Assembly: GCA_964188305.1 (NCBI GenBank)
Contig: OZ076885.1
Source of the DNA: Podarcis bocagei
Taxonomy: Eukaryota
Length of the DNA stretch: 64,000 nt
Strand: one strand, 5' to 3'
The notes below the pieces were generated by a model, which saw nothing but the letters and a program-made list of their open reading frames with translations, made no database searches and was not told the origin of the DNA. Below, piece after piece: positions 6,011 to 37,228 of the stretch. The position numbers were made by a program, and so were the translations under genes. Every line of letters begins with the position of its first letter. Positions within the stretch are counted from its first letter, which is position 1.

Positions 6011-9000
6011 TAGAGAAGGTGAATCTCAAGAGGTCTAGTCCTGTTTTGTTAGATGAATTACAGGTGGTATGGCTTGAGGATGTGGACCTGTTGAGTACAA
6101 AATATTTTAGGTTCAGCAAATTATGATACTTGGATATAAATGAGGGATGTGTTGTTGTTTAGTGAGTATGCTACTGTCTGAGGTTCAGTCTCTGGCATTT
6201 CCCCCTAAAAGGATCTATAGTTCAACTAGGAAACATGTTTGCTTGAATTCATGGGAAGCTGCTAAAGGTCAGAGTAGATAGCACTGGGTTAGAAGACCAA
6301 TGGTCTGACTTGATCTAAAGCAGCTTTATAAGTTCTTTAGCAAAAACCAAAGTGCAGTAGCCATGATCTAGACTATTTGGCCTGCATGCATAGTTGAACT
6401 GAAGAATAAGCTGTGTGAACAAGGCACTGTTGGTACAGAATGTGCCTAGTATTTTCTTAAATACTCAGCCCAGAAGCTTCCTTTCTTGTGTCCTTTCCAT
6501 AATGCATCAGTTTCTGAAATCATCAATTTCATCACTCAGATTATGTATTTAAACTGGATAAGTGCTTTCATGTCATCATTTTGCAGCACATGCAAATATA
6601 TTTTTGTTTGTTTTGCTAATCACTCATTCCAGACTGCAGTTAAAAGTAACTAAGCGTCCTCATTCCCTTTAAAATATGCCTTCTTTGTTGATAAGGAGTG
6701 TGGATGTATGTTCAGTTAATGCTCATTAATGCCACAAAAGCCACCCACACCTGTGTGTACAGTGGTAATTCACACACCTCAATTATTAGATCTGTTAGGG
6801 AGTCTCTTGAAAAGAGATTGGGGGAGAGGGCATTGCTTATCATTACATTTCTGCCCCCTGTTGTGCTGGCAATGCAAGTTTCTGACCAGAATCCCACATT
6901 CTGACTGATTCTGTAAAGGAATAATTATGTTCTGAATATACATGGAATTTTAAACTATTTTTGGACTACATTTTTCAAGCAGAGGAACTATATTTCTAAT
7001 ATGAAATGTGGTGGTGATATAATAATTAGTGTTGGGTTCTTCATCTTTCTGTGACTATTTTCAGATATGGTAGGGACTGCTGCATCTTTTGCCCCAGTGT
7101 GCAAAACAGAATCCATAAGGTCTTACCTATCTCTAGTCTATACACACATGAAGGTGTGGTATAAAAGGTTGGGGCTATTGAGATGTTTGTGTTTATTTCT
7201 CACATAGGCTCCCCCGCCAGACTCATTACTCAAAAGGGAATAATGAACAAAGGCTGTCAGAAGAGTAGTCCACAGCATGACCTGCACCATATGGCATTAG
7301 GGAGATAGATTGCATGTGCTAATTTAGATCTCTGCCTTCATTAACATTTTCTTATGTTTTCCCCAAATTAACTACCACGCTGACTCAACAGTCAAGGAAC
7401 CAATTCCTTAGAATTGGTTAATATTATATCTGGATCAGCTGAAGACAGAAATGCTACCTGATCTTCTTTCAGTCATGTTCCCTGACATGTTTCATTTGCA
7501 TAGCTGCTTTTTTCCATCCGTAATGCCAGCAACACCCTTTTTCATCTGCTGAGGTTTTCGTTGTTTGTCTCTAAATTCTCACTAGGAAAGAAACAACCAA
7601 GTCATAAAATATTTCAGTGCATGACATGAACAGGCAGTTGCAGATCAGAAGCAATGCTTAGTAAATTGTATATTCCACTATTCCTTCCCCTGTCATTCCA
7701 TTGCCAATACTGTATGGAATTTAAGAGCCTTCTGCTTTCGCTTTTTCTATAAGTTCCTGCTCCAGTTCCGTATGATCCCCAGAGCCTTGTTTTATTCTGT
7801 ATAAAACTGTAATACCCTTTTATAGTTATATTTAACATTTTAAACCACTTCACCCACAGGCCTCAGATGGAATCAATACATGGTTGCATTTTGGCTTATT
7901 TCATGGCATGTGTACTCAGAAACCATATGCTTAGATCACAACTGGATAGTGAAATATACAGGCAGTTAAGTCAGATTAGCCTGCCCATCACTCACTCATC
8001 ACATTGGCATATCTTTGCATTGTTAGTGTAGAAGAATAACATGAAATTTGTCTCGGTCTGTGTAATATAGATCTACCATCAGGTTGGGTCAAATGAAATT
8101 ACCTTGGGGGTTCTCAGACAGTAGAAGTTTTGCCCTAGTTACCGGTAGTTAGTTTGTTGATAGTGATTCTGGCTTCCTTTATCCCTGTTTTGGCTGATTA
8201 CCCTCATATCTTGCTTTGAACCAAGCACACCTTGTGCAGTAGTACCATTTGTTAAGTCTATTTTAAAATATAATATTTGACTCAGTAATACACATGCTCC
8301 ACTGTTCTCATTAGCCCATGTTCTGTTGTAGCGGTCTTCACCCAGAAGAAAGGGAAATCCAGAGATCTTAAGAAGAAAAAGCTTTCCATTATCCCATAGA
8401 CCCTTCCCAACAGGCCAGTTTACGGCTAATTGAAGAAAAATTCTACTAATTAATCATCAGTGTGCATTTACCTCCGGAATCTGGAAATGGGGGCCTCCAT
8501 TTGCGGGAACTAACATTTGTACATTGCAAGTCTGGAGGAAACTTGCAGCTCAATTTTATTGCCTTTACCTAGGTGCTTCTAATGACTGATGTATCAATAA
8601 AACTATTTTGTGTCATTAAAGCAGCTATATGTTTATACCTTTTGAAAATGAATTTCCTCTCCTGCCTGGTGTGTAATACCAATTAATTTGAAATACGGCT
8701 ATGGTTATTTCCATTCATAAAACCTTAGACAGTGTCTTGCATCATAGTGAACTGGCTCTTCCATTAAGCAGCATATCGCTAGCAAATCTTTGGTCAGATT
8801 CTGTCATATGTGACGTGCAACGTGATATTTGTGCTTACTGTACATTGTATTTAAAGCATATGCATGTGAAGAACAACTTTGGTAGGAAGACTGTTTCTTT
8901 CCTGACTTTTGGATGCTTTCCCTGTGCATCCAAATGTTTAATGTTTCTGGCATTTCAGTACACTTTATTTTAATCCCAGTGGGGTGTATTGTGAAATTGC

Positions 9001-9889
9001 TAGCTATTTCCAGGCAGTCTGAAATATAGAAGGTTAAACGCATCAAAGAAATAGTTGTTATGGTTTATGATGTTTTGTAAGCGTGAAGGAATTGTATCTT
9101 TTTGTTTTCGTTAAGGCTTTACTAGCGTTCATTGTTGCAGTGCAAAATTGTACCTTGGCCAGAGCTGTATTCATAGAGTGTAATGAGCATAGCATGAGAC
9201 AGAGAAAGCAGGAAGGGTTTCTGGCACAAATATGAGGAATGGATCAGCAAACAACAACAGCCTAGACAACAGTATAGAACATTTGTAGAAATACACTCAA
9301 ATGGAATTGGAGGATAGGTGATCCCCAGTTGGGATCATTCAAGTGAAGATCATTCAAGATCCCCAGTTGGGATCATTCAAGTGAAGAAACAAGACACCCA
9401 ACTGAACAGTAACAATGCTTTGTAAACTGGAGGTTCACTTTTTTCTCTCTATCTGTATTCCTAATATGACAGAAATTGGTTGTGCTCTTTAAAAACATTG
9501 GTGGGAATATGGGATAGAAAATAGAGTATAGTTTTAATGGTTTATCTGAGCTCCTAAGACTCTGCACATTTTTCTTCTCTAATGTTCTGTGTGACCGTAT
9601 AAGATACCCTCTGTCTTTCATGGTCCATCTTAAAACGAAGATTCTTGAGAAGTTTATATTCGAGATTGCTATAGCTATAAATTAGTCAGACAGAGAGCAA
9701 AGAGAACTCTCTTGATAAGGATTGTGCTTCCTGTTTTGCGAGAAGGATTTTTCTTCAGGTCATATTCATCAGTGTGCATCATGGATTTTGTGCTGGTGTT
9801 TGCCCCTGTTTTCACTATAGCATGCAATGATTTGGATTATGTCAAGTAGTATGTGAATGTGAGCTAATGTTTGAATTGCTGGGTTGCCA

Positions 9890-9981
9890 GTTGTACATAT
9901 GAAAAAAACCTAGGGGTCTTAGTGGACCACAAGCTTAACACGAGTCAACAGTGTAATGCATTAGCAAAAAAAGCTAATGCT
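9890..9981 (+). mobile_element. CR1 LINE ORF2 fragment
   Basis: Encodes EKNLGVLVDHKLNTSQQCNALAKKANA, matching the CR1 RT C-terminal motif ERDLGVLVDxKLNMSQQC. Confidence 0.75.
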
Positions 9982-11529
9982 TGACCGCTGCTTAAGTTTC
10001 AAGTACTCTGTAAAGAAACTGATCTGTAAAGAAACTGACCTCCCAGTCCACTGGCCCTGACCATCCAACACTGCTGCTTGTCTTAGGCAGCACATCCTTC
10101 CTGATGTTTATGTGTTGAAGCAGGCACATACTGGTGGTAAGATGTGTACAGGATAGGCTATTGATGTGCTTAGTTTTCCTGCAGGTTAGAACATGGTTAC
10201 AGCCCCTCTCTCACCGAATTTTAAAGAACCTGGTCTTAAGGAGCACTCAGGTAATTTGTACAGCTGCCAGGTGTGAGTTGCTAACTTATTTTTCTTGGAA
10301 TGTATAGCTCAGGAATGCTCAAACCTGTTTAAATTCCCTTTGGGGACCTAATCCCCATGGAAACCTCTCATTCTACCAAGGAGAGAGGCTGAAAAAAAAT
10401 CTTCAGTACATTCCCATTAACACACAACTATCAAGCTGCACAGATCTCTTTGTGCAGTCACGTGGTTAGCATCTTTTTTTAAAAAGTACAAACTCATATT
10501 TGGAGCTTACTCTTTGGCATCAGTTTGTTAAACATGTAACTGTTCAGTCCTCTTAATTTTGTAGAAATGCATACAAATGTATGAGCTGTTAAGTATCAGG
10601 CTCCAAAAGGCTTACAGTGTTCAAAGGCTGCATTGCCTGCAGAGCTGCCCATTACTCTCCCCTAGCTAGTCCTTGAGCAATAAGAACCTGAAGTGCATTT
10701 GCCTGAAACAAGTATGCACTCCTTTCTCTCTGGATTCATGCTGCTTCCAAAAACATTGCTGAATGATCCTCAAATGTAGGGAATACTTAACAAGAACACT
10801 GAACAATGGACACAGCCTAGTACTTGTGTGGGAAATATAATTGGAGGCCTTGTGCCCCACTCCCATACCCATTTTAACTCTGTACATCCTTCCTCCCTGT
10901 TTGGTAAGACCAGGAGAAATGTTTATTGCACATTTTAAACCAGTCTTCTCATTACATTAACAGAAATATTTGTGGCATGCTGCCATCAAAGAACGTGGAA
11001 GCAAGCTAATGAATGCTAATGATTTCCAAGTAGCTTGTCAATAGAACAAATTTAATAATCAGTGTTTTGGGATTCTACATTCATAAGTCAGTGTGTTGCT
11101 AGGGTACAGAAGTCAGAGATACTGTCTTCTCCCATCTGCTTTGAGACTGATGGTGATCTGTATTTCCTGTCTGTGTCATTCTTCTAGCTTCAGGCCATAG
11201 CCTGGATGAGGCAGTGCCAAAAATTAGATGAGGAGTCTGCGAACACACTTTTTAATCCATAATCGCTCAATGTGAGAGAAGTATATGTGGCAAGTACATG
11301 TGACAACTAGCAATGTGACTAGTTATTCTACAATCAGAAAATGCTACATATAGAATAGTAAGAGTTGATAGACAGATGAAGAAAAACAGTTTTCTTGTAC
11401 ATAAAGTTTAATGGTTTCAGTCCTAATTTCAACCATTAATCACTGTTGGCATACTTTGTACTTTAGTTCAATAGCCACAAATTTTAAAAAAGTAAATATT
11501 AAAATATATTTCTCAATATTATCCAGATA

Positions 11530-12040
11530 GATACAAATAGACACCCTTCATGTGAAAGCAGGCTTTGGTAGATTGAGCACAGGAGACCAACAGTGGGTCC
11601 AAGAGCCAAGAAGACAGTTTCTGCACATGCTGTAGAGAAAGTGAGGAGCAGATGGGCTCATCAATGTGGGAAGGTAACCCATCTAGGAGATGGAAAATTC
11701 TGATCCTAAGCCTCCACCACCTTGCGGGATCTCTTTGGAAGGTGAAAAGGCAAACCCTACATATACCCAGATTCCAGATTCCAGGAGTCCCTAAGGCAGT
11801 TGTACACCTCCTTCTGGCAACTCCTGCAGCCAAGCTGGTGCCAAACATATTGCTCTGCTTTTCTTTGGATCACATCCGTGAAGCAGCACAAGACCTCCAT
11901 ACACACTGCCCAGACTTGCGCCCCAGAGAGAACACTTCGCTGTTGCTAACTTCAACCCCGGAGGAGCACTCCATTCTGTCTTGAGACAGATGAATGCCAG
12001 CAGCAGCAGCAGCAGCAGAAGCTACAACAACAACAACAAC

Positions 12041-12045
<5 letters not shown>
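11530..12045 (+). mobile_element. Probable RTE-derived non-autonomous retroelement with a CAG/AAC tail
   Basis: GGAAGGTAACCCATCTAGGAGATGGAAAATTCTGATCC resembles an RTE 5' UTR motif, and the block ends in an (AAC)n tail. Boundaries are approximate and the family was recognised by eye only. Confidence 0.35.
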
Positions 12046-12085
<40 letters not shown>

Positions 12086-12087
12086 AG
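11998..12087. repeat. Compound microsatellite (CAG)n(AAC)n(AC)n
   Basis: Directly visible. Confidence 0.95.
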
Positions 12088-12226
12088 ACAATTATATATC
12101 TTTTTAAGAGGAAGTAAATCTGTTGAAAGCATGCCCAATGTCCATATGAAAGCTATAGGCATCTCTTTATGCAGGTCTGCCTTGTAGCAGATCAGACTGT
12201 TGGTCTGTCTAGCTCAGTAATGTATA

Positions 12227-12468
12227 CAGTGGTACCTCCGGTTACATATGCTTCAGGTTACATACGCTTCAGGTTACAGACTCCGCTAACCCAGAAATAG
12301 TGCTTCAGGTTAAGAACTTTGCTTCAGGATGAGAACAGAAATTGTGCTCCGGTGGCGCGGCTGCAGCAGGAGGCCCCATTAGCTAAAGTGGTGCTTCAGG
12401 TTAAGAACAGTTTCAGATTAAGTACGGACCTCCAGAACGAATTAAGTACTTAACCCGAGGTACCACTG
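12227..12468. mobile_element. Tigger/pogo-like MITE (242 bp), copy A
   Basis: TIRs CAGTGGTACCTC...GAGGTACCACTG with TA on both sides. Confidence 0.92.
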
Positions 12469-12535
12469 TATTGTGTCTCTGGCTCTGCAGAAGTCTTACC
12501 CACCACCTGCTAATTGAGCCTTTTAACAGGATTAT

Positions 12536-13717
12536 ACTTGGTGCCTTCTGCATATGAATAATGGGCTCTACAGCTTGAACTGTGGTCCCTTTGTCATATT
12601 GCTGGTCCCTTCCTATAGGAATTATTGTCTGTATCTTATTTATATTTTATTGATCTTTCATTAGGCCTCTTGTGGCTCACAGAATCAGTTTGTTTGTTTG
12701 TTTATTTATTTTTACTTTGTACTTAACTGATCCATGGCAAAATGCTTAGGTGGACTTTTTTTTTTTTTTTAGTACATTCCTCTGGAAGCCTTCCAGGCTT
12801 TGACAGATGACAAGGGGAAGTCAGCCTCAAACTTAAGGAGCAGCCACTGAGAGTGCTTGCTCCACAAAACTTGGCAATGGAATGTGCTGCTGATTACTGC
12901 TATGCAACCATGGGTATCCCAGAACCTAGCCTTAGGCTTTATCGGCCCATTCAGGAGAAATTGAGGTGGAATGAACTGTACCACTTCAAAACCAGGTTGT
13001 GATTCCAATTTTGAATAATCTCCCATGTAACAAATTCCCTGATGATAGAACTACATAAAGCAGAAGAGGAGGAGGAGGAGTGGATTTGATATCCCGCTTT
13101 ATCACTACCCGAAGGAGTCTCAAAACGGCTAACATTCTCCTTTCCCTTCTTCCCCCACAACAAACACTCTGTGAGGTGAGTGGGGCTGAGAGACTTCAAA
13201 GAACTAGCCCAAGGTCACCCAGCAGCTGCATGTGGAAGAGCGGAGACACGAACCCGGTTCACCAGATTACGAGACTTGGTGCCTTCTGCATATGAATAAT
13301 GGGCTCTACAGCTTGAACTGTGGTCCCTTTGTCATATTGCTGGTCCCTTCCTATAGGAATTATTGTCTGTATCTTATTTATATTTTATTGATCTTTCATT
13401 AGGCCTCTTGTGGCTCACAGAATCAGTTTGTTTGTTTGTTTATTTATTTTTACTTTGTACTTAACTGATCCATGGCAAAATGCTTAGGTGGACTTTTTTT
13501 TTTTTTTTAAGTACATTCCTCTGGAAGCCTTCCAGGCTTTGACAGATGACAAGGGGAAGTCAGCCTCAAACTTAAGGAGCAGCCACTGAGAGTGCTTGCT
13601 CCACAAAACTTGGCAATGGAATGTGCTGCTGATTACTGCTATGCAACCATGGGTATCCCAGAACCTAGCCTTAGGCTTTATCGGCCCATTCAGGAGAAAT
13701 TGAGGTGGAATGAACTG
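12536..13717. repeat. Local direct duplication: 12536-12978 repeated at 13274-13717
   Basis: 443 vs 444 bp. The only difference I found is one extra A after the T15 run. Confidence 0.95.
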
Positions 13718-13798
13718 CCCCTCCGCTAGGTGAAATAATGAAGAGGAGATTGTTGGATTAATTAGCCAGTCTCTTAACCACTACACCACACTTGCTCT
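13062..13798 (-). mobile_element. Squam3-type tRNA-derived SINE, split into body (13062-13273) and head (13771-13798)
   Basis: Minus-strand head AGAGCAAGTGTGGTGTAGTGGTTAAGAG (A box). Body contains CCGGGTTCGTGTCTCC (B box), GGGTGACCTTGGGCTAG and a (CTC/CTT)n tail. Confidence 0.85.
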
Positions 13799-16700
13799 TT
13801 TAAAGAGAGAGAGAGATTATGCACCTGCAGACTGAATAGGTAAAGTCCATCCTATCACATCATTCTCTTGCATATGTGGTCCAGTGATAAGTCAAAGAGC
13901 ATTTCAGGCCTGTAAATCTGAGGGCTGGTATACACTTGCAGCAGAATGATGTGGTTAAACACTGAGGTTGCCCTGCAGGAAGAGCCAGTTCACTGCAGGT
14001 TTATAAATGCAAATAATAAATAAATATAACCACTGCAAACATTGCTAGCCAAAGGCTAAATGTGGCATTATGTATATATACCTGTCCAAGAGACAGGTTG
14101 TCTTTGTTTGCAGTCAGCTCTGAACAAGGATTTAATTCTAATAATACTCTGGGAATCCTGATTCCCAGTTATGCTGTTATTTTATATATTCTCGGATATT
14201 CCAGGCAAGCTGGGAGGAAGAACTAGTTATGTTAGTGTGTTGCAACTGACATGAAGGTGTCCTTGCACTTGATTTTTGACCTTTCTCTTCCCCTCCCGGG
14301 ACAGAATATGTCACTTCACTTTCTTGGTCTTTGGCTTTTACTGCAGTCATGTCAATATTCACTTAACACAAAAGGGCATCTCTTTCAATAATGCACATCA
14401 AAGGTGTTTTGCTATAAAAACCTGGACAATCCAAGCAAGCCTTATGCAACATATTATACAGCATCTGGGTTAAGGGCAGCTTGGAGTGTTCTGTTTTTAA
14501 AAAAAGCAAGAGGAGCTTTATAGCAAGTAATCTATAGCTGTATAGAGATGGATAAAGCAGTAGTTGGGTAGGATGTACACCACTTTGGGATTAGGTGTTT
14601 TTTTGTGTGTGTGTGACCCTTTCATAGTTTGGGAGGATTCAGTGTTTAACATTTTCAAGAACAATCAAAGCAGAACATTGAACAGATATTTTATGCTTCT
14701 GGAGTTAAGTTTACATGCAGTAGCAAGGGAATTGAAAGGTTTTAGCAGGCATGCATAGAATAGTGGATGATGAGGGGAGTGGATTTGCCTTAGGACTCCC
14801 TGTTAATGAGAAAATATCAGTTCCATTCACCACGGCTGTGTGTATCTGCCTGTTCCACCCATGAGAATAAACACCCATCATGATAAAATAAGAAAATTAT
14901 AGGAAGAAATGAGACATTGAAAGATTATCTAGTCTGTCTCCCCACCCAACTGGGACCAATTATCCCTATTACCATCCCTGATGCAAGAAAAACACTTAAA
15001 TTTCATAATGTAATAATTTCCAGCCATAATAGTGTGTGTTTTCCATAGGGTGTAAATTGAATAATAAAGTGACTGATGTCAGTGGAGTTCCCAAATACAG
15101 ATCTCAAGTCCAGCCCTGTGAATCTTTCTATTTTAGTACAGAAGAGTTCAGTAGTTACGTTTGATTTTTTTTAACAGGGTATGACATATTCTGTTGACTA
15201 GGCTTTCCCCAAAATCATTAAAGGGATATCAATTCTGTAAAAATGTTTGCTGACAATATGCCTAGCTGAGCTTTGAAGCAAAAGTTAGGTGCATGACAGA
15301 ATACCAGCCATCTGGCAACCAAACATATTTCACTCCTACCTAACCTCTGACTTCAGAATTGTCAGAGCCTTCCTATAGCACCTGTTCTGTAGGGCAGGGA
15401 TTTCTGTTTCAGAACCCTTCAAGTGATGGTGATGAATATGCTCCCAAATAATAATAATCTAAGCTGCAGCTGTTGAATTTTAAAAGTTTCCTCCACATAA
15501 AAAGTTATGCTTTGCTTTTACATTTTAAGGACTGTGCTGTATAGCACGCGAATAAAGCCAGTGTGCATTTCTTCATTGCAATGAAATGTGACGTTAAGCT
15601 ATTACTTGAAAACTGTTTTCCAGTGTAAATTTTATGCCTACCATGGGAAACAATAGTAGCTATGTTCATTGTTATAACCTTGATGGGGAAGCCCAGTCTG
15701 CTTGTTCATTTAATCATGCAAGGAACTGAGGATTCTTGTATCCTCACCCACTTTTGCTTCCTGACTTCTACTCACAGTGATAATATGTAGTGAATGTTGT
15801 GATTGCGTAAATTCTTGCTGTTTAAAAAAAAAAAGTATGTAGAAATGAAATATTTATTTTAATCTCTGGATAAATTGCATAATTTAGAAATACATTTAAT
15901 TTGCATATTCTAAAAGCACATCCAGGATTCAAGCAGGCAAATTATTTGCAGGCATAGAGATCTGAATCTCAGCCCATGAGAGGAAGGGTAGGCAAAAGTC
16001 TGGAAAGCCTAGGCATGGAGATGTGGAACAAAGGCATAGGGTTAAATATTAACAAGGTTGGGGGACCCAAAATTGTCTGTTGGATCAGAGTTAGCTAGCT
16101 TGTACAGTCAAAGAAGACAATGTAGGATGGCCCTGTTTATAGAAAAGAATCAGTAGCATATATGACAAATTTTGTCCTAGTTGTTCAGTTTCCTGACTTG
16201 AGAATACGGAGAAATTTGGTAAGATCAGAACCAGCTGTTCTCCAGGTTTCTTTCACCGAGTGGACTGCACTGCGCCAGGTGGGAGATGAACTGTAGCTTT
16301 TAATGGCATGTATTTTCTCTGCTGAGATCGCCTATGATGACAGAGATAGAAATTTTTTAAATAAAATAAAAATAATTATGCTGATGGGGTATTTTCCCAG
16401 CTTGTAGTACTGTAAGCTTATTACCTGCCCTCAGGCTCTGGAACACTGGTAAGCTGTTTGCTTACAATATAAGCCCTGGAAACAGATGGTCAGTCCCCTG
16501 CTATTGCTGTCAGCCAAAGGCAGCCTTGGCCTTGTTGTATAAGGGAGACTTCCGATTCCATCAACGAGGCAGAAATATTAGTTTCTGACAAATAAATCAT
16601 CCCCATCCCTTCTACTGATTGTAGAACACATTTCAGAGTCCACGGTTTTCTCTTTTCAGTGTGTTAGGCACTTGGGTTTATGTAGTTTTTTCCGCCACGT

Positions 16701-18317
16701 GCTTTCCTTTGTGGCAAGAATGCTTATATGTAATGTTGCATAGAGGCTGCCCCATAGAGAGTCGGCCAATCTCAGTTTTCTCTGTACTCCCTGGTAGTGT
16801 CTCTCTAGGGTTTTTGATGGGAGACTTTCACAAACCTACCTGGAGATGCTGGATATTGAACACAAGACCTTCAGATGTTCAACCCATTGAGCTACAGCCC
16901 TTCCTAAACCACCAATAACCTGCCAGTCCCTTCCCAAAGAGAGTACTGAATTCTTATTTTAACCATGAACTGTGAAATCCATTTACTATACTTATTACTG
17001 AGCCAGTCTTGAGCGTGCAGCCTTGCCACACATAGCCATAAATGCTCGCTTGCCACACATATCTACTACATAAGTCATTGGTGGGCTAAAGAAACAGCTT
17101 TCGTAAAATAAAATTTTGCTCAGTGAGCTAGCAACTGGTGAATTGTAAGTTATAACAGCTTACTTTAGTTCCCATTTTCTTGGAACTGGTGGTCAAACAG
17201 GCAGAGAAATATGGTACAAATTGAAAACCTTTTAAGATTAAAATTCCTAAATGTACACTGAGATATTTTATTCAGCGTGTTAACCCTCCTCAGGGTCTAT
17301 AATTGAGGGCAGTTCCTGTGTTGGTGGTGGATGGGGGTGGGGTGGAAGAAACTAACTGATTCCTACTGCTTTATCTAATAAACTTCTGCATCATCAGTGT
17401 TAGTCCCACCCAAACATTCCTATGCATTAACTAGGCCTGTGGGCATCATCATCGTCAATAGATCTGTGCGGAGACCAGCACATCTGTTAAAACATGGATT
17501 GTGATGGGAAAAGCTTACATGGGTGTAATTACATGTGTGTAAATGAGCCTTTTTAATGATCCATTTGCTCCCTGATGGGGTTAGTAGCCTTTATATATAT
17601 GAGGGAATAGCACTTTTTCCATTTTACAGCTACTCAGTATTTTAAAGAGCCAGAGCAAACCCAATTTCAGATACATATATAATGGGCGAAATGAAACTGT
17701 GTTACAGCGAAGTGAAGCTGAATTGAAGCATGAACAGATCCCAGAAGCACAACATAGGGTGTCCTCCACTGCAATTAAGAGAGAGAGGGGGGGGCAGACC
17801 AAGGAAGCAGACATTGGAAGTGCTATTGATGTATCACTGATGTGGTCCGAGAAGCACTTGGGATGATAATGTTGCTCTCTTTGCTCTCCCATCCGACACA
17901 GAACTTATTTTTATTTTTATCACTGAAGGCCCTTGCAATATGTGTGTCGGGTAAGGTATGTGTATAAGAATGAAATTTATAATTTATTAGAAGGCAGTAG
18001 AACGTGTGCTATCATTTTTCCCGTAGGCAAAGCCAGTTTTTGTGTAAGGTAATTCCACTGACAAGATGAAGGATCCATTCTGAGCCAGCAGACTGCAAGC
18101 AAGAGGCCAATTATACCTGTAACAGGGTAGCCATAGCCAACGACTTGTCACACTCCAGTGGACGGCACTACTAATGTACAGTTCCCAGGATTAAAAGTTG
18201 GCCGTCTAGTGTGCACCCAAGTGCATCTCAAAGCAATAAGCTTTAGTGATGTAGAGATGTATCTTAATCACAGTGCCTACTCTAGTATCACTTACTGGTT
18301 TCCAAATCTTAAATCCG

Positions 18318-18530: not shown

Positions 18531-18901
18531 GGAAAAATGCTCTATGAATTACCTGTCAATAATGTACCGTAAGCAAAATGAGTACTGCATTTTAATCATC
18601 TCTGCCTAAATTTGCAATATAACTTGCAATTTCTTGTAATAACTGCTTGTTGTTTTTTTAAGCATATGTATTGTAACCCTTACCACTAAACAGAAGTTTA
18701 ATGCAGCATTGAAATGCTAATCTAAAATCTGCAAAGCAGAAGACAAATGAGATTAAGGCATAAACTATCAACATGTTTTACATGAGCAAATGGATTTTTG
18801 ATAACTTAGTTGTAGGCAGCTCTCTGATTTTTTTCTGGAACATGTAGTGGATCAATTTTCTTTGTAAAGAAAAATGTTATGTTAAACTTTTTTTCTGGCA
18901 G

Positions 18902-18972
18902 GGTGTGGGCACTGTAAGAAAATGAAGCCGGAATATGAGAACGCCGCTGAGGTGCTCCACGCAGACAGTGAT
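18902..18972 (+). CDS. PDIA5: PDIA5 internal coding exon (71 bp, approx. human exon 12) with the WCGHC active site
   Basis: Acceptor tttttttctggcAG and donor GTaagc. Translates as (W)CGHCKKMKPEYENAAEVLHADSD, matching remembered PDIA5 WCGHCKKMKPEFEKAAEALHGEAD. Confidence 0.96.
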
Positions 18973-20172
18973 GTAAGCTAATTCCCTCTTCTTAGCCTGT
19001 TTCCAAATTATCCTTAATAAATAAATGAAATCATAAAAATTGTTCTCCTTTCTTGCTGCAAGAATTTCAGCTGTTCTCATCTTCCCAAGGGGCTGCAAAA
19101 GCGATGGTTCCAAAGTAGAAGCTCATCGGTAATGCATGAGCTCTGCCAGAATTGTTAGCAAGAACATTCTGTCTTTAAACACAAACAAAACATTCACAGG
19201 GTGTTTATATATTCAGCCGTAGAGCCTTGCATTGTACATAACATGATTGAGCCCAAATGCTGCACAGAAATGTTTTGTCCCCACTATTAATTACAGGTTT
19301 CATGTATAACACAAACCTATGAAAGCATTGGCTTACATTTAATGCTGTGCACTTGTAAACTAATAAGGGTGTTCTCCCCTTCTGTTTAAGCAGGTGTTAC
19401 TGACTTTGACTTGATTTTCTGCCTACCTATTGTGCATTCCAGTATTGCAGAGAAGAGTTAGGCACGACTGCTATCATTAGTATAATTAAAACCATGCACT
19501 AATAGGTCATGCAACAAGAGCTGGCCTCACTGCATAATTTGAGCACTTGTTAACTATGTTCTGGGAGTATATATTTGGGGGAGGGGGAGGGGTTCTTACC
19601 TGCTGTTTAATGGCTGAAGGACTTTAGACATAAAGGTGGGTAGAATTTTGCAAACCCAGGAAAAACCATCATGGAGTCTTACGCTACAAATGGGAAGTCT
19701 TGCTGGGTAAATGCTCTTCATTCAAGGCTCAGGGCCATGCTAGGTCATCCCATCATTACACATGTGCAGCAAGTGTTGATTTTTTAAAAATTGTTTTATC
19801 CTTTTATGATTCTTTTTTAAACAATCAAGCGGTGTATAATTTTTTTGAAATAAATGTATGTTGGCCAGTTAATAGTTTCACAGCTTTTATTCTCCCTTTC
19901 TGCAACATATAGCAATAATGCTTTAGTAGATTGGATGGAAATTTTCCTATAAGGATTTACCCTTAAAATGGAAAAACATTATTTGTCTTAACAAAACTGA
20001 TTAAACCGTTCTTCTGTTTGTGGTGATAGAAAGGTTCAAGTACACCTTTCTATGTATGCTTTGCACTTCCTTTGTAAAACCCATTCTGGGCTCTGAATGA
20101 CTGGCTTATGAATTCTCCCTAAGCTTCACAACCAGTGATTTGTAGTTACAGGTATTACTCTTTATATTGCAG

Positions 20173-24086: not shown

Positions 24087-24642
24087 GTGAGTAGATGTTT
24101 ATCTGAATCATGCCTCTAATCATGCAAATACATAGAGTGCAGCAGAAAGAGTAATACCTTTTCAGTGCTTTTGCACCAAACTAGACATGAGTGCATTCTG
24201 AGTTTTAGATATGCTCAGAAATGCATCTCAATTCTCTGCCAATTTGGCCCTCATGATATTGATTGGGCCAGCACTGCGGGGGAGCCAACTGTGTTGGAAA
24301 GGTAGGTCCAACATCAGAACTGTCTCCCTGACATTAGAGAGGGCTCCTCGATACAACCTGTGGCCTCTGGGTTGCTCTCTTCGGCGTGTAGCCTTTGTTT
24401 GTTTGAAAGAAAAATAAGAAACTGCAGGTAACAAGCCTGTTCTGCACCAATATGAGCCACTCTGTAGTTGAGAAGAACATATTGGTGTTCTGAACATTTA
24501 GTATAATGACTTTAGCTTTTATGTAGAAATATGCTGAACTTCAAAATTCCTGTTACAGGTAGGTAGCCGTGTTGGTCTGCCATAGTCAAAATAAAAAAAT
24601 TCCTTCCAGTAGCACCTTAAAGACCAACTAAGTTAGTTCTTG

Positions 24643-24824
24643 GTATGAGCTTTCGTGTGCATGCAGACTTCTTCAGATACATAGCACCTTAAAGACCAAC
24701 TAAGTTAGTTCTTGGTATGAGCTTTCGTGTGCATGCAGACTTCTTCAGATACATAGCACCTTAAAGACCAACTAAGTTAGTTCTTGGTATGAGCTTTCGT
24801 GTGCATGCAGACTTCTTCAGATAC
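24643..24824 (-). ncRNA. Three further minimal hammerhead motifs (24643-24680, 24715-24752, 24787-24824)
   Basis: Same motif as unit 4, but stem II is GUCUG/CACAC with one C-C mismatch. Confidence 0.72.
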
Positions 24825-24858
24825 ATAGCACCTTAAAGACCAACTAAGTTAGTTCTTG

Positions 24859-24896
24859 GTATGAGCTTTCGTGTGCATGCACACTTCTTCAGATAC
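24859..24896 (-). ncRNA. Minimal type I hammerhead ribozyme motif (unit 4, fully paired stem II)
   Basis: Minus strand reads GUAU-CUGAAGA-A-GUGUG-CAUG-CACAC-GAAA-GC-UC-AUAC. It has a 4-bp stem I, the CUGANGA and GAAA core boxes, a palindromic AGCU in place of stem III, and a UC cleavage site. Confidence 0.8.
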
Positions 24897-27800
24897 GTAG
24901 CACCTTAAAGACCAACTAAGTTAGTTCTTGGTATGAGCTTTCGTGTGCATGCACACGAAAGCTCATACCAAGAACTAACTTAGTTGGTCTTTAAGGTGCT
25001 ACTGGAAGGAATTTTTTTATTTCAAAATTCCTAAATGAATGTTATGGCAATGCTACCAAGCAGTTGAAATTCTAACGCTGCCTTTTAGAAACAATGAAGA
25101 GCATAATCTGGTTAAGCCCAAATGCTTGCTTAAGCTTTGTAGTTTTAATAACTTCAGAAGGTTTTGCTGGCTGTGTTCCATGTATGCTAGTTCCATAGTG
25201 CACTGAATTGCACAAACACGCTGATGGTCATGTATGCAAGTTCCCCCCTGAAAATTATTTCTCCAGTACATTTACTCATAACACTCCTCTGTCCTTCCTT
25301 AATTCTAGCAGGAGCATTTTGAGGAAAGTGTGTCATGGTCTTCAGTGTCACAGCTACACCACATGTCTAAAGCACATAACTTCCCCCAAAGAATCATAGG
25401 AACTGTTGCTTAACAGTTCTGGGAATTATACTCAGTAAGGGGTAAACTACAGTTCCCAGAATTATTTGAGGGAAGACGTATGGTTTAACTGTCTGGCATG
25501 AACCTGACAATGATTTTTGAGATGAGTTGTCATATTTCAGAACTGTAAAGTGGGCTGCAGTTGGTTGGATGTGTTTCTTAAAACCTTTGAGATAAAAACT
25601 CCACTACGGATCCTAATTTAGTAATGGAAATACCTTTAATTTGATGCTATGATGAATCCTATAACTAATGTATTTACATCTGCTGTAATATTATCATTTC
25701 CTGTGCTCATGAGGCTCTGAGACTCTTAAGTTTTATTTCAGAAAAATGTACGAGTGCATGTGGTACCTTTGATATATAATGCACTCATATACGCACAGCC
25801 TCTTCTTAATCAAGCACTGTATGGTGTAACTACTGAATATTTCAAATCTCTGCTTGCAGTGAGATACTTATTAGGGAAATCGAACAAATACAAATCATCA
25901 TGTAGTGAGACGGTTCCTTTTCTCCACTGGTAATGTGCCTTCTGTTAAATTTGATAGATTATCGTTGTTTATCTCTTTCTCAGTCACGGAGCCTCTCGGG
26001 GTTTTTATGCCTACCAATTACCACTAACTTGCTTATTTTAGTGCAGAAGGAGAACGACTAAGATGGCCCAGCAAATAATTTTCTTTTCCTATTCAGAGCC
26101 GTATCCCAGGTCAGTGAAGCTCCTCAGCCAAGGCCACCATACTGTGTTCAATAAAGAGTTGCAAACGCCTTGCGTGATTAGGGTTTGTTTTTCGATCTGC
26201 TTGAACTCTTTGATGCTTTCTAAAGCCTTCAGTTTAATTAGGCGAATAGTTGGTGCAGGTATAATTGCAGCTGGCAAATCCCCACAAATAGTTGCTGAAA
26301 TGTATAGCATCTTTATCTGAGATCTCATGAAAGATCCCAATGGCTACTTAATAAAACTGCACCTTCCCATTCAGTCACTTTAGGAACTCCTACGATTGTC
26401 TATTATTCCCCATTTCAGACATGGGGAAATGAAATAGAAAACCTTCTGAAATAGGACGCTAAGTAGAGGAATAGATTACCCATAGCAGAAAGGGTGAAAA
26501 AGGTGAAATGGATTACAAAGTAGGATAGAGTAGGCCTCTTACTATGTGTGTCTCACAATGATAATGATAAATAATAGTCGGGTAATATAACTGGCACACT
26601 GTAAAATTTCTTCTCTGTTTCCCTTTGCAATGCCATTTCTGCATATGGCTTTTTCATAGTACTTGGAGTTTTAACTGCTAGCTGCCCCCATGCCTAAAAC
26701 CACAGGGCAATTTATCTGCATTCATCAGAGTGCAGTCCATTTCTACCATTTCTACTACCCCTTGTGTGCTTCAACTGGCATTGGCCAGTTGGTGCTTAAT
26801 CCATGTAAATTGGAAGACTTGTTGCACCTGCACAAAAGAGCCCAGGATATATATACCATCATTAGCATCTAATCCAATGCAGCATCACAAAGCATGTGTT
26901 GTGTTGTTGTTGTTTTTAGAAAAATAATATTTATTTATTTATATATATATATAAAAAGAGATACTGTCTCCAACAGGGGCCCAACTCTTATTAGTAAGCA
27001 TGAATCACTGCAACTCCCTTCTTAGAGAAGTTAGACTGGGTCCCTCCTTGCTGTCCTTCTGCTGACTGTGAATACTTCCTTATTCCAATAGGCCTTTTAT
27101 TGTAATTATTGGTATGTTTTAAACAGATTTTATATATGTATATAGTTTTAATTCTATGTTTAATAGTATTTTGATTATTGATTTTCCCATGTTTTTAGCA
27201 GTTCTTGTTTTTATCTGTAAGCTGCCTTGAGGCGGGGAATAAATAAATAATTATTATTAATAATAATCTTAAGAGTAGTACAGGTTTCGTTTTACTTTTA
27301 AATTTTGTGGTCACCTGCATGAAAAGGATTTCAGTTAGTTACTTGACTATATAATGAGACAAAAATTGTGTTTAAATAAATGTCAGATACCATACATAAT
27401 TATGTACCAGTCTTTATTATGGATATATAGCCTTTCCACATGCTACTTTAAACATAATTAAACCATAGTTAAAAGGTGAATGCGCAGCCTTCTGGCTCAC
27501 ACTGCTGAAATCATAGGCACTTCACTTCTCCCCCGCTTCTCCTGCTGCTATGGTTGCAAACCTTGGTTATAGCTCAGGGTATGTTGGAGAGGAACAAACC
27601 ATAACTCTGGTTTGGATGAAACACTAAGCCAGACCATAATTTAGCACCCAATGCAGCAGGAGCAGGGGATGGGCAAAGCACCTACAGTTGTAGCACTGTG
27701 CAACAGCATATTCATTCACCTTTAAATCATGGATTTAGCTCATTTGTGGTTTGTGACATACAAACCAAGCCATTGACTAGATGCAAAGGAGAGCAGGAAA

Positions 27801-34309: not shown

Positions 34310-36985
34310 CTCAAGTACATGTATATACCAAGTACAGTAATGCATCTAGCATCCTTCCTTTGTCTTTCCTAGAACCTATTGTCTGTCACCAGCCTTAGTC
34401 ATTCATTCTACATTATAGAGACAGCTCCTGCAAAATGTTTGTCACTAGGAAAACAGAAACAAATTACTGTTGTCTGAACTTCTGTTCATAGTTATTTTGA
34501 ATCAATGTCATCTTTTGGAGATGACTGTGATGAGTCAGAATATTGCACAGCATGAAACACATGGCAGGTAAACATGGTAGGATCATCAAGCAATTCTACA
34601 CATTGACTGGTATAGGATTTTCAGATCGGATTTTCAGTAAGATGTTCAGAAAATCTCACAATAGCAAAACACCTAGCAGTTGAATTTTTGTGCATTATAA
34701 TGTGCATGTTGCTTCTTTAAATGTTATTCTTCTAGTGAGTATGGTTGTAATTTGCTTTGCTTCATAATACACCATGAGGTCTAAACAGTTAAAACCTATT
34801 TATTTATAAATGAGTATTTCTGAAGCATTATTTAGTAGCCTGAACTAGCGTAATAGTTCCTCTCGCCATATGAAAGCTAGCTTATGGTTAAGCCTTTGTG
34901 CCCAGGAGCCTATAAATTTAATTTGTGGCATGTCACCTCATACAAACAAGGAAAACATCCCTTTTCAGATCAAATGGTATATGTCCTGAAAATCTAGAGG
35001 TGGTAAAATTTTGGTATTTTTGAATGCTCCCTGGTTCCTCTGACGTGAGTGTTTTACATGGAAGAGCATTCAGGAACACAATCCTTCACTTCAGGCTGCA
35101 AGTGATAAAGTATCAAATTCTACCACCTCAAGTCTACATACCAGAGCTCATAGAATAGCTCTGTCAGTTGAGCATCAAATTTTCTGCTATATATTTTAAT
35201 GTGCAAAAGAGCCTTTTTCCCTTTGGCTAATCTGTGAAGCAGCTTCCTGGCAGTCTAGCCTGCTTCCCAGCCCTACTGCTCAAGAATTCAGGGGTTTTGC
35301 TGTTTAGGTTCCAATGCCTAAGCATTGATAAAGACTCGCTTCAGCTGTCATTTTCCTTTATTATGTGACTTCTGAGAGGAGTTCTGTCAATTCACGCTTG
35401 TTTCACCTTCTTTAGTATATTAATGCCCTAGCAGAACCATTAAGGAGAGTGAAATGAAGTAATTGAAATAGTGCTGCCTCTTACTGGGTGTACCTCAGTG
35501 CACAATTACTGTTCAAAGAGAAGGGCTTTCTCATTCTCTGAAAAGACGAGAAGCCTTTTTTGTGCCACTCATTGTCCATTTGCGAATAGGTAAAACTAGT
35601 CTCCATAAACATAGTCTACTGTTCAGTTTCTGTCTGATCAGGCCTGTTTTGTTCTGTGCTGACCGAGAGGGGAAGAGTGCCACCTATATGTGCATGTGGC
35701 ACAGCTAACAACAGTAAAAGCAACATTTCACAATCCGCTGCTGTTAAGCTGGGGAGGCACTCAGTTGGGCAGCAAGTTCTTTCATTATAGAGAGGTGGGT
35801 CTTAATTGATGTTTGGCTCCTGAGCCAGTTTTAGAGAGTGTATAGAAGCAAAATGTAATAGAAGTGGTGTTTATGTACCTTATGTACCAGATGTTTCACC
35901 TTCTGTACACAGAGATCAAGGGCTGCCAGGAGAAGGATGCAATGACACTTGTGTAGGTCTAGCTGATAGAAACAGGGAGATTTTAGAGCAGCAAAGGAGG
36001 AGAAGCTGTAGCAGTGAAAGCTGTAGGGAACCTAGTCAAGGAAGGAGAAGCACTGGCAAGAGGGACAACTGCTGTAGTCTACTTATGTGAAAGTTGCTTA
36101 GAATGAATGTGATGCAAAGCCTTTGAATTAGGAGAGTGAAGAAGAGGGCACAGCCCTCCTTTAAAGAAGAATTATTTGGTTTTCAATTCACATTTCTCTC
36201 ACTCAAAAGCAATGGCTGTGGTTTCCTCTTTCTTTCCAGCCTTAGGTTTCTATTTATTTTTTGTAAATAGAATCTGACGTACTTGTGTGGTGTCCTTTGG
36301 TTCTGTGATATGATTGACTGTCCAAATTCAAGATAGCTGTGATAAAAACAAAAGGTTGATGATTGTAGAAAAGCTAGGAACAGATGGTCATAAACTCCAG
36401 CACATGGGGCAAGTACAATAGGACAATGCAATCATCTCCAGTCTAGAAGATATTGCAGTGTGGGTAGGAAGATTGCACGGGCATCGCCATCTTTCCCAAG
36501 CACCAAGGGGAAACATGCCAGATTTCCCAAACTTCTCACTTTACCCTTCACATCTTCTATAACAAATGTAACGTACAGTTCATAGGTTGGTACTGCTAGG
36601 CAATGCTGGTGAAATAACCCTGGGATATTTCAGTGAATTAAAATGATGTGAAATTGCACACTTGGTGGCTTTGTGTTTTGGGCCAGCTTCATCCATTTAG
36701 CTGAATGGTAATATCCTTCATGTAGTGGGGTGGAGACCACAGTTCCAGGTATGTGCAAGCTGAGACCCTGAAAATATGCAATGTGTGGGTTGTTATCCAT
36801 GATCCTTCCACCCCACTGTAAGATAACGTGTGTATGAACACATGACCCAGTGGTGATGCCCACTCAAGTGGAATCAGATTTGCACACTCCCAAAGCCTCA
36901 CTTGCCACCATGTGCAGCTAGACTGAATATCTAAGAACATCTAAACTAATTTGATGATTAATGTTGTTTTTCTCTTAATTTGCAG

Positions 36986-37056
36986 GGTGCCCACACTGTA
37001 AAAACTCCATCCCCCATTTCACAACAGCTGCAGAACTATTTAAAGAAGATCGAAAG
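36986..37056 (+). CDS. PDIA5: PDIA5 internal coding exon (71 bp) with the WCPHC active site
   Basis: Acceptor tctcttaatttgcAG and donor GTaatc. Translates as (W)CPHCKNSIPHFTTAAELFKEDRK. CPHC is the characteristic third-domain motif of PDIA5. Confidence 0.97.
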
Positions 37057-37228
37057 GTAATCCCATTTTGGATTGTTTCTAAGGTGTTATGTAGAACATC
37101 ACAGCCATCCTTTTCTGCTAACAACTTTTATCCAGGTTTTAAAATGGTGAAATGCTGGGCTTGTGCTTTAAAGCAGTGACAAAACAACTGAATAAATTAA
37201 TCTATCATCTAAAGCGAAGGCAGTGGGC

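What the first reader, a model, noticed from the sequence alone, without database searches (positions are those of the whole stretch)
24610..24896. Tandem array of four minimal hammerhead ribozymes (72-nt period) in a PDIA5 intron: candidate ultra-short retrozyme-like unit
Seen: four complete head-to-tail 72-bp units. On the minus strand each reads GUAU CUGAAGA A [stem II] GAAA GC UC AUAC, a full hammerhead core with a 4-bp stem I, one extra A after A9, and palindromic AGCU instead of a stem III hairpin. Established: Penelope-like elements carry such minimal type I hammerheads, which cleave poorly as monomers but can work as dimers formed by tandem copies. Metazoan non-LTR retrozymes are tandem hammerhead repeats that release monomers which circularise, usually with longer units. 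Inference: an antisense transcript through this array has the geometry for double-hammerhead folding. It would cut at UC^AUAC (between 24863 and 24862, then every 72 nt) and release three 72-nt monomers. The ribozyme strand is antisense to PDIA5, so the host pre-mRNA would not be cut.
Basis: partly seen in the sequence, partly recalled or inferred. Interest (0 to 1): 0.85.

Follow-up and report, generated by a model that had tools for sequence, protein, structure and literature searches.

The report
Penelope retroelement scar with repeated hammerheads
The four 72-base hammerhead-ribozyme repeats are real. They sit inside one young, otherwise ordinary Penelope-like retroelement insertion in a lizard intron, and nothing found here shows that they act as a tiny circle-forming retrozyme.

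Summary
A 72-bp tandem array of 4.8 units lies at 24610-24953. Each of the four complete units carries a minimal type I hammerhead motif on the minus strand. No such motif appeared in 200 shuffled windows.

The array is part of a 469-bp insertion (24552-25020) flanked by a 12-bp target-site duplication. Contigs from two related organisms show the exact empty site, so the insertion is young.

Its arms belong to a very abundant dispersed repeat. The motif has the features published for Penelope-like element (PLE) minimal hammerheads. The two arms differ by a ~39-nt terminal "tail", as described for PLE reverse-transcription start sites.

Several points argue against a working retrozyme:
- Units 1-3 carry a C·C mismatch in stem II and do not fold as hammerheads.
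- The double-hammerhead fold lies 16-19 kcal/mol above the minimum free energy.
- The unit boundary is the family's 5' end, not the ribozyme cut site.
- The 72-nt unit lacks the family's 3' end.
- An antisense transcript would fold into a long hairpin.

No RNA data exist for this species. A 2026 preprint already reports PLE-derived tandem hammerhead repeats of 51-972 bp.

This scan holds 111 notes mentioning Penelope and hammerheads, the eight shown all from this genome. None of those retrieved describes a 72-nt array.

The parts
24540..24551 (.). Left copy of the 12-bp target-site duplication TTCAAAATTCCT
   Evidence: Longest shared word between the two flanks. Contigs of two related organisms join 24539 directly to 25021 and hold a single copy (records 9 and 16).
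24552..25020 (-). The whole 469-bp insertion: a Penelope-like element terminal fragment with a tandem array and an inverted arm
   Evidence: Empty site in runs X13 and X15. Filled site in X1, whose contig runs 24200-24565. Thousands of contigs of a dispersed family align to its arms.
24552..24590 (-). Distal 'tail' (about 39 nt), the AC-rich 3' end of the element on the minus strand. It is present in the left arm only.
   Evidence: The right arm mirrors the left only as far as 24591. Family copies end at about 24552 and about 24587-24588 (loose ends). This matches the two reverse-transcription start sites and the optional 30-40-nt tail of PLEs.
24591..24609 (-). Proximal part of the element's 3' region, shared by both arms
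   Evidence: Inverted repeat I1, 24589-24668 against 24943-25022, 99% complementary.
24610..24825 (-). Units 1-3 of the 72-bp array. They are identical and carry the derived stem II variant and the A-type junction.
24826..24897 (-). Unit 4, with the family-consensus stem II and the G-type junction
   Evidence: It is the only unit that passes the strict descriptor.
24859..24896 (-). Minimal hammerhead of unit 4: helix I 4 bp, helix II 5 bp, AGCU in place of helix III, predicted cut between 24863 and 24862
   Evidence: The minimum-free-energy fold shows stems I and II at -6.8 kcal/mol. Descriptor hit.
24787..24824 (-). Hammerhead motif of unit 3, with a C·C mismatch in stem II
   Evidence: Minimum free energy -1.5 kcal/mol, not a hammerhead fold; 198 of 200 shuffles fold at least as well. 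Found only by the relaxed descriptor.
24715..24752 (-). Hammerhead motif of unit 2, same variant as unit 3
24643..24680 (-). Hammerhead motif of unit 1, same variant as unit 3
24898..24949 (-). Partial fifth unit. It holds only the 3' half of a hammerhead and is broken at the centre of stem II.
24950..25020 (+). Inverted arm: the same element fragment on the opposite strand, without the distal tail and without the CUGAAGA half of the hammerhead
   Evidence: Perfect spacerless palindrome 24897-25002 (I5). Sequence.
25021..25032 (.). Right copy of the target-site duplication

Best explanation
This is one young insertion of a very abundant Penelope-like element (PLE) terminal fragment into an intron of a PDI-family gene of a lizard.

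Inferred insertion mechanism: the element's reverse transcriptase primed on both cut target strands and copied the 3' end of the element RNA from two alternative internal start sites about 39 nt apart. The two same-sense cDNAs met and joined at the self-complementary hammerhead stem II. That gave the head-to-head palindrome.

In the longer arm, the 72-nt segment from the family's 5' end (the first base of hammerhead helix I) to 38 nt past the cut site is present 4.8 times. The first unit-to-unit junction arose from an event that had nothing to do with ribozyme cleavage. Candidates are a template jump of the reverse transcriptase from the RNA 5' end to an internal site, or a DNA-level duplication. 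A mutated unit was then multiplied to three copies, probably by slippage or unequal exchange, as in any minisatellite.

The hammerhead motifs are passengers inherited from the PLE. They are not evidence of a self-processing 72-nt RNA. The array is at most the raw material from which a non-LTR retrozyme could arise.

Shown here: the array, the target-site duplication, the empty site, the abundance of the family, the family ends, and the motif features. Inferred: the order of events and the mechanism of the tandem duplication.
For: - **Array and anatomy:**
- **Insertion:** there is a 12-bp target-site duplication. A 2659-nt contig of run X13 and a 263-nt contig of X15 join 24539 to 25021 exactly, while the X1 contig enters the element.
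- **Abundance:** 7,500-17,000 contigs per run align to the arms, with summed word depth around 10^6 against 13-48 for the flanks. Loose ends cluster at 24552, 24587-24588 and 24896.
[quoted passage not shown] The class is reported in reptiles.
- **Anole comparison:** the Poseidon_Ac hammerhead has the same layout with a different sequence.
- **PLE biochemistry:** the PLE protein cuts and extends both target strands. Reverse transcription starts at two internal sites 30-40 nt apart, which defines the optional tail.
- **Unit pattern:** units 1-3 are identical and share two derived changes relative to unit 4.
- **Same genome:** other notes of this scan describe many palindromic Penelope insertions, two of them by title folded or centred at hammerhead stem II (s1-341807 elsewhere, s1-347547 at this locus), and tandem pairs 162, 517 and 2846 nt apart.
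Against: - How the first 72-nt junction formed is not shown. I found no microhomology that would guide a template jump to that internal site.
- In X13, which lacks this insertion, the bin just past the first unit junction (24692-24732) has summed depth of about 1450 against 48 for single-copy flanks. This hints that similar unit-to-unit junctions exist at other loci, which would fit a recurrent mechanism or a small array-bearing subfamily. The contigs behind this figure were not listed, so the hint is weak.
- No RNA run of this species was available, so transcription and cleavage are untested.
Confidence: 0.8

Rival explanations
1. The array is a nascent or active non-LTR retrozyme. An antisense transcript folds into double hammerheads, perhaps helped by the PLE protein, and is cut every 72 nt. 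The monomers are ligated into 72-nt circles that serve as templates for further tandem copies.
For: - There are four complete motifs in head-to-tail order, and the nested double-hammerhead pairing scheme is formally possible.
- PLE minimal hammerheads show some activity as dimers, and the anole one cleaves when its protein is added.
- Li et al. 2026 derive non-LTR retrozymes from PLE ends and list consensus lengths down to 51 bp.
- There is a weak hint that junction-like contigs occur elsewhere.
Against: - Units 1-3 have a C·C mismatch in stem II and fold at -1.5 kcal/mol, away from the hammerhead shape. Only unit 4 passes the -5 kcal/mol criterion of Li et al..
- The double-hammerhead fold is 16-19 kcal/mol above the minimum free energy, because the palindromic stem II sequences of neighbouring units pair with each other.
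- The full antisense transcript folds into a long hairpin with the inverted arm, at -213.8 kcal/mol.
- The unit boundary lies at the family's 5' end, not at the cut site, so ribozyme cutting and ligation cannot have made it.
- The 72-nt unit lacks the family's 3' end, where PLE reverse transcription starts.
- The array carries one tail and one target-site duplication, as expected of a single ordinary insertion.
- The fragment has no PLE sequence upstream of the hammerhead, so it probably has no promoter of its own.
- In anole RNA-seq no reads end at the PLE hammerhead cut site.
Confidence: 0.07
2. The copy number, or the array itself, is an assembly artefact. The real locus holds one or two units.
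For: - Identical 72-bp units next to a perfect palindrome are hard to assemble.
- The available runs are de Bruijn contigs, which collapse such repeats and cannot confirm the copy number.
Against: - The assembly holds two distinct junction types (A and G) and two stem II variants in a consistent order. This is not what a simple over-collapse or over-expansion of one unit would give.
- The insertion itself is confirmed in an independent run of the same or a very close organism (X1).
Confidence: 0.05
3. The array was copied whole from a pre-existing master array elsewhere in the genome. A multimeric transcript ending in a PLE tail was reverse-transcribed once. On this reading the units never expanded in place.
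For: - Identical mutated units cannot arise from repeated copying of one consensus RNA. A heterogeneous multimeric template would explain them in a single step.
- Depth beyond the unit junction in a species with an empty site here hints at other junction-bearing loci.
Against: - No second array has been seen, either in this window or among the notes retrieved from this scan.
- The depth hint is indirect.
Confidence: 0.15

Closest known systems
Minimal hammerhead ribozymes of Penelope-like elements (Cervera & De la Pena 2014, PMC4209133; Lunse et al. 2017, not held here)
   Same: - Type I layout with no helix III.
- A palindromic tetranucleotide (here AGCU) at positions 15.1-16.1.
- Helix I of 4 bp and a longer helix II.
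- One unpaired nucleotide after A9, and G10.1-C11.1.
- Huge copy number, mostly as solitary truncated copies.
- Copies often occur on opposite strands close together.
   Different: The class itself is not different. The local sequence differs from the published anole example. Three of the four copies here carry a stem II mismatch.
Poseidon_Ac (PAc) of Anolis carolinensis (Frangieh et al. 2024, PMC11167929)
   Same: - The hammerhead lies roughly 90-95 nt upstream of the element's genomic 3' end.
- There are two alternative 3' ends 30-40 nt apart (the 'tail'), and the end is AC-rich.
- Insertion goes into AT-rich DNA.
- Extension occurs from both target strands, which fits the inverted arm.
   Different: - The sequence family is different: CUGAGGA-U...GAAACGUC in PAc against CUGAAGA-A...GAAAGCUC here.
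- In this copy the reading frame that starts in loop II stops after nine codons.
- No 72-nt tandem unit is described for PAc.
Metazoan non-LTR retrozymes (Cervera & De la Pena 2020, PMC7229834; Li, Clavereau & Pollet 2026 preprint)
   Same: - Head-to-tail repeats, each with a type I hammerhead.
- Low GC content.
- Origin from PLE terminal sequence.
- Vertebrate hammerheads that need to act as dimers.
   Different: - Classical retrozymes are 170-400 nt, carry canonical hammerheads with loop-loop contacts, occur at many loci and are abundantly expressed as linear and circular RNA.
- Here there is one locus, a 72-nt unit, minimal hammerheads that are mostly damaged, no RNA evidence, and a unit that lacks the PLE 3' end.
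Ordinary minisatellite expansion inside a transposon fragment
   Same: - Near-identical units.
- A derived variant unit has been multiplied.
- A single locus.
   Different: The unit happens to contain a ribozyme motif, and its boundary coincides with the family's 5' end. That coincidence suggests the reverse transcriptase made the first junction.

Membership tests
PLE minimal hammerhead (min-HHR) | Conserved boxes CUGANGA and GAAA, with H17 (any base except G) at the cut site | tested here: met
   CUGAAGA, GAAA and C17 are present in all four units. The family variant at 24863 turns C17 into U17, which is also allowed.
PLE minimal hammerhead (min-HHR) | [quoted passage not shown] | tested here: met
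   There is an extra A after A9, and stem II opens with G and closes with C. The feature list comes from PMC4209133.
PLE minimal hammerhead (min-HHR) | Short helix I (4-5 bp), long helix II, no helix III, palindromic 15.2-16.2 | tested here: met
   Helix I is GUAU/AUAC. Helix II is 5 bp in unit 4 and is interrupted by C·C in units 1-3. AGCU is palindromic.
PLE minimal hammerhead (min-HHR) | Residence in a Penelope-like element | tested here: inconclusive
   No reverse-transcriptase ORF is present at this locus. The PLE assignment rests on four things: the abundance of the family, its sharp ends, the two 3' ends about 39 nt apart, and the inverted-arm architecture. Unchecked notes of this scan also describe intact PLEs in the same genome.
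PLE minimal hammerhead (min-HHR) | Self-cleavage as a dimer or with the PLE protein | not testable with these tools
   This needs in vitro transcription. Published examples show low activity.
Non-LTR retrozyme | Tandem repeat with a hammerhead in every unit | tested here: met
Non-LTR retrozyme | [quoted passage not shown] 2026) | tested here: not met
   Unit 4 folds at -6.8 kcal/mol and units 1-3 at -1.5 kcal/mol. The fifth unit lacks the 5' half.
Non-LTR retrozyme | Canonical type I hammerhead with loop 1-loop 2 tertiary contacts (2020 definition) | tested here: not met
   Only a minimal motif is present. Rfam finds no hammerhead match even at E<=10.
Non-LTR retrozyme | The same tandem unit dispersed at many loci | tested here: inconclusive
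   There is no other copy in the window and no other 72-nt array among the notes retrieved from this scan. There is only a weak depth hint of junction-like contigs elsewhere. No whole-genome search was available.
Non-LTR retrozyme | Expression as linear and circular monomer RNA | not testable with these tools
   No listed run that holds the locus is on record as RNA. The 'RNA?' runs belong to an organism with the empty site.
Rfam hammerhead families | Score at or above the gathering threshold | tested here: not met
   There are no hammerhead hits. The only hits are sub-threshold matches of the palindrome, mostly to generic miRNA-hairpin models.

The most novel reading that the evidence does not exclude
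The locus is a dated first step in the birth of a retrozyme. A PLE tail inserted after the split from sister species has amplified its hammerhead segment. Its antisense RNA, helped by the PLE protein, is cut into 72-nt monomers that circularise. These would be the smallest hammerhead circular RNAs known in animals.
Probability: 0.05. Interest if true: 0.6.

Novelty: new member of a known kind. Interest (0 to 1): 0.27.

Why it matters
As it stands the locus is a tidy example of things already described:
- PLE minimal hammerheads.
- The PLE 'tail' and two-strand priming.
- The proposal that PLE ends seed tandem hammerhead repeats.

Its modest value is that the event is bracketed in time by an empty site in relatives. 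It also shows that the repeat boundary is the element's 5' end, which points to the reverse transcriptase rather than the ribozyme as the maker of the first junction.

If 72-nt circles were found, the locus would set a new lower size limit for ribozyme-bearing circular RNAs in animals.

Tried and rejected
- **Rfam:** searched at gathering score over the whole window and at E<=10 over 24300-25300. There were no hammerhead hits, only generic hairpin matches to the palindrome.
- **BLAST of the insertion and of a single element against the window:** no further copies.
- **Anole PLE paper supplement:** a search for this element's words found none. Reading the Poseidon_Ac consensus showed the same hammerhead layout in a different sequence family.
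- **Scan notes by sequence:** blank.
- **Lunse et al. 2017:** not held. A review was used instead.
- **Read laying:** all four runs were de Bruijn contigs. They could not give the copy number, the strand, RNA ends, or a clean count of junction-bearing loci.
- **Fold-back self-priming as the origin of the inverted arm:** considered and rejected. The right arm continues into tail sequence rather than into a mirror of unit 4, so it was copied independently from the RNA.
- **Ribozyme cleavage plus ligation as the origin of the 72-nt period:** considered and rejected. That process can only recreate the C17-A1.1 bond, not the unit boundary.

Full report
**1. The observation**

The sequence at 24610-24953 is a tandem array with period 72, 4.8 copies, 99% matches and no indels. 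The repeat finder gives the same register.

The units starting at 24610, 24682 and 24754 are identical. The unit at 24826 differs at two positions: 24882 is C where the others have G, and 24897 is G where the others have A. A fifth unit (24898-24949) is cut short.

On the minus strand every complete unit reads GUAU, CUGAAGA, an extra A, a 14-nt stem II hairpin, GAAA, GC, U, C, then AUAC. C17 is the complement of 24863 and A1.1 the complement of 24862.

I wrote a minimal-hammerhead descriptor with these elements:
- 4-bp helix I
- CUGANGA
- optional bulge
- helix II of 4-8 bp
- GAAA
- a paired 15.2/16.2
- U16.1
- H17

It finds only these sites in the 64-kb window and none in 200 shuffled windows. 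The strict version finds unit 4 alone. Allowing one mismatch in helix II finds all four. The motif is real and not a chance match. Rfam gives no hammerhead match at gathering score or at E<=10, as expected for a motif that lacks helix III.

**2. What surrounds the array**

The array is one arm of a larger structure.
- A perfect spacerless palindrome spans 24897-25002, centred on the self-complementary stem II.
- A longer inverted repeat links 24589-24668 with 24943-25022.
- The word TTCAAAATTCCT occurs at 24540-24551 and again at 25021-25032.

Laying public contigs on 24200-25400 settled what this is.
- A 2659-nt contig from run X13 (organism G) and a 263-nt contig from X15 (organism H) join 24539 directly to 25021. 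Their flanks differ from the window by about 2%. These relatives carry the empty site with a single copy of the 12-bp word.
- A contig of X1 (organism A, 0.5% different in the flank) runs from 24200 across the left repeat copy into the element, ending at 24565. This organism carries the filled site.

So 24552-25020 is a 469-bp insertion with a 12-bp target-site duplication, and it is younger than the split from organisms G and H.

**3. The family**

The arms of the insertion attract 7,500-17,000 contigs per run. Summed word depth is near 10^6 against 13-48 for the single-copy flanks. This is one of the most abundant dispersed repeats in these genomes.

Unaligned contig ends pile up at three places:
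- at 24552
- at 24587-24588
- behind 24896, with near-random continuation

Family copies therefore end, on the minus strand, at two alternative 3' ends about 35-39 nt apart. Many begin exactly at the first base of hammerhead helix I.

Among positions that vary in more than 10% of the family depth, only one lies in the hammerhead. It is 24863, which changes C17 to U17, and both bases are allowed at the cut site.

**4. Comparison with the literature**

Cervera and De la Pena (PMC4209133) defined the minimal hammerheads of Penelope-like elements by these features:
- helix I of 4-5 bp
- a longer helix II
- a conserved G10.1-C11.1 pair
- palindromic 15.2-16.2 with no loop 3
- thousands of mostly solitary copies per genome
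- frequent pairs on opposite strands
- presence in reptiles
- very low activity in vitro, even as dimers

Every structural feature is met here.

Frangieh et al. (PMC11167929) showed the following for the anole element Poseidon_Ac:
- The hammerhead lies at the pLTR-ORF junction.
- It cleaves only when the element's protein is added.
- Reverse transcription starts at two internal sites in an AC-rich region. The sequence between them is the optional 30-40-nt 'tail' seen in a fraction of genomic copies.
- The protein cuts and extends both strands of AT-rich targets.
- No RNA-seq reads end at the hammerhead cut site.

The Poseidon_Ac consensus has the same hammerhead layout (CUGAGGA, an extra U, stem II, GAAACGUC) in a different sequence.

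The present insertion fits this picture closely. Its left arm carries the AC-rich distal tail (24552-24590) and its right arm stops at the proximal end. The element ends 95 nt after the cut site. The target is AT-rich. The two arms face each other as expected if both target strands were extended.

I infer that two cDNAs of the same sense can anneal only where the sequence is self-complementary. This would explain why the palindrome is centred on stem II. Among other notes of this scan on the same genome, two titles place a palindrome exactly at hammerhead stem II: s1-341807 on another piece and s1-347547 at this locus. Several others describe palindromic Penelope insertions without naming the centre. 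All are unchecked.

A follow-up note names the genome as a lacertid lizard. I did not test that.

**5. The host gene**

Stop-free stretches on the + strand at 18886-18978 and 36979-37089 encode thioredoxin-type active sites, CGHC and CPHC. Pfam PF00085 matches the first at E=3e-5. The second weakly matches protein disulfide isomerases in the PDB. The order CGHC then CPHC fits PDIA5 from my own knowledge of its active sites.

No complete hammerhead lies on the + strand.

**6. Does the array work as a retrozyme?**

Several results argue against it.

- **Damaged motifs.** Units 1-3 have a C·C mismatch in the middle of the 5-bp helix II. Their 38-nt motif folds at -1.5 kcal/mol into a non-hammerhead shape, and 198 of 200 shuffles fold at least as well. 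Unit 4 folds into helices I and II at -6.8 kcal/mol. By the operational rule of Li et al. 2026 only unit 4 qualifies. That rule requires two consecutive complete hammerheads, each below -5 kcal/mol.
- **Disfavoured fold.** The nested double-hammerhead pairing can be drawn, but it lies 19.3 kcal/mol (units 4+3) and 15.9 kcal/mol (units 3+2) above the minimum free energy. The palindromic stem II segments of neighbouring units prefer to pair with each other. A full antisense transcript of the insertion folds into a long hairpin with the inverted arm, at -213.8 kcal/mol. These are thermodynamic predictions and do not rule out co-transcriptional folding.
- **Wrong boundary.** The unit boundary, GCUA(C/U) joined to GUAUC, coincides with the family's 5' end and not with the cut site. 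Cleavage plus ligation can only restore the C17-A1.1 bond, so the 72-nt period was created by something else.
- **Missing 3' end.** A released 72-nt monomer would lack the tail region where family copies end and where, by analogy with Poseidon_Ac, reverse transcription starts. The known PLE route could not copy it.
- **One insertion.** The array has a single tail and a single target-site duplication.
- **No RNA data.** No listed run that holds the locus is on record as RNA. The 'RNA?' runs come from an organism with the empty site.

**7. How the array arose**

This part is inference. At least one unit-to-unit junction must have been present when the two cDNAs joined, because the partial fifth unit is part of the palindrome. 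The coincidence of the boundary with the family's 5' end suggests that the reverse transcriptase reached the end of its RNA and jumped to an internal site of another template. I found no microhomology to support this.

Units 1-3 share two derived changes. A mutated unit must therefore have been multiplied. Either this happened in place by slippage or unequal exchange, or the template was a multimeric transcript from an older array.

One hint favours recurrence. In X13, which lacks this insertion, the bin just past the first junction (24692-24732) has summed depth near 1450 against 48 for single-copy sequence. The contigs behind that number were not listed, so I treat it as a lead only.

No other 72-nt array is in the window or among the notes retrieved from this scan. 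Those notes mention tandem hammerhead pairs 162, 517 and 2846 nt apart.

**8. Novelty**

PLE minimal hammerheads, their dimer model, the tail, and the derivation of tandem hammerhead repeats from PLE ends are all published. Li et al. 2026 report retrozyme consensus lengths of 51-972 bp, with a reptile mean of 176 bp. They explicitly propose that a truncated PLE end can amplify locally into tandem repeats.

This locus is a new member of a known kind. It is a dated example of that first step, carrying mostly damaged ribozymes. I give the functional 72-nt retrozyme reading about 5-7%.

**9. Limits**

- Copy number in the assembly, transcription, cleavage and the genome-wide count of the junction could not be tested with the tools and caps available.
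- The window contains no N.

Noticed in passing
window:24897-25002: The perfect 106-bp spacerless palindrome is centred exactly on the 14-nt self-complementary hammerhead stem II. Two same-sense cDNAs primed from opposite target strands could anneal only at such a palindromic word. This may explain why fold-back Penelope insertions in this genome break at stem II. In the PDI-gene pre-mRNA (+ strand) the palindrome would form a long perfect intronic hairpin.
   Followed up: partly
window:24896 (family 5' end) and 24552 / 24587-24588 (family 3' ends): Contigs of the dispersed family stop sharply at the first base of hammerhead helix I, with near-random continuation beyond it. Many copies therefore appear to be short elements of about 90-130 nt made of hammerhead plus tail. 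This would fit copying of a short RNA that starts just upstream of the hammerhead, possibly at a transcription start in the terminal repeat.
   Followed up: no
window:24692-24732: Run X13 has the empty site at this locus. It still shows summed contig depth of about 1450 just past the first unit junction, against 48 in single-copy flanks. Similar tandem junctions may exist at other loci.
   Followed up: no
window:24620, 24635, 24976, 24991: These are common family variants (A>G and A>T in the left arm, and their mirror positions in the right arm), held by a third to two thirds of the family depth. They show at least two large subfamilies shared by several related species.
   Followed up: no
window:25106: Organism G carries a 7-bp insertion (TCCACTG) behind 25106 relative to the window, and about 2% substitutions in the flanks.
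   Followed up: no
window:18886-18978 and 36979-37089: Two thioredoxin active-site exons (CGHC and CPHC) lie on the + strand and bracket the locus. They fit a PDIA5-like gene.
   Followed up: partly
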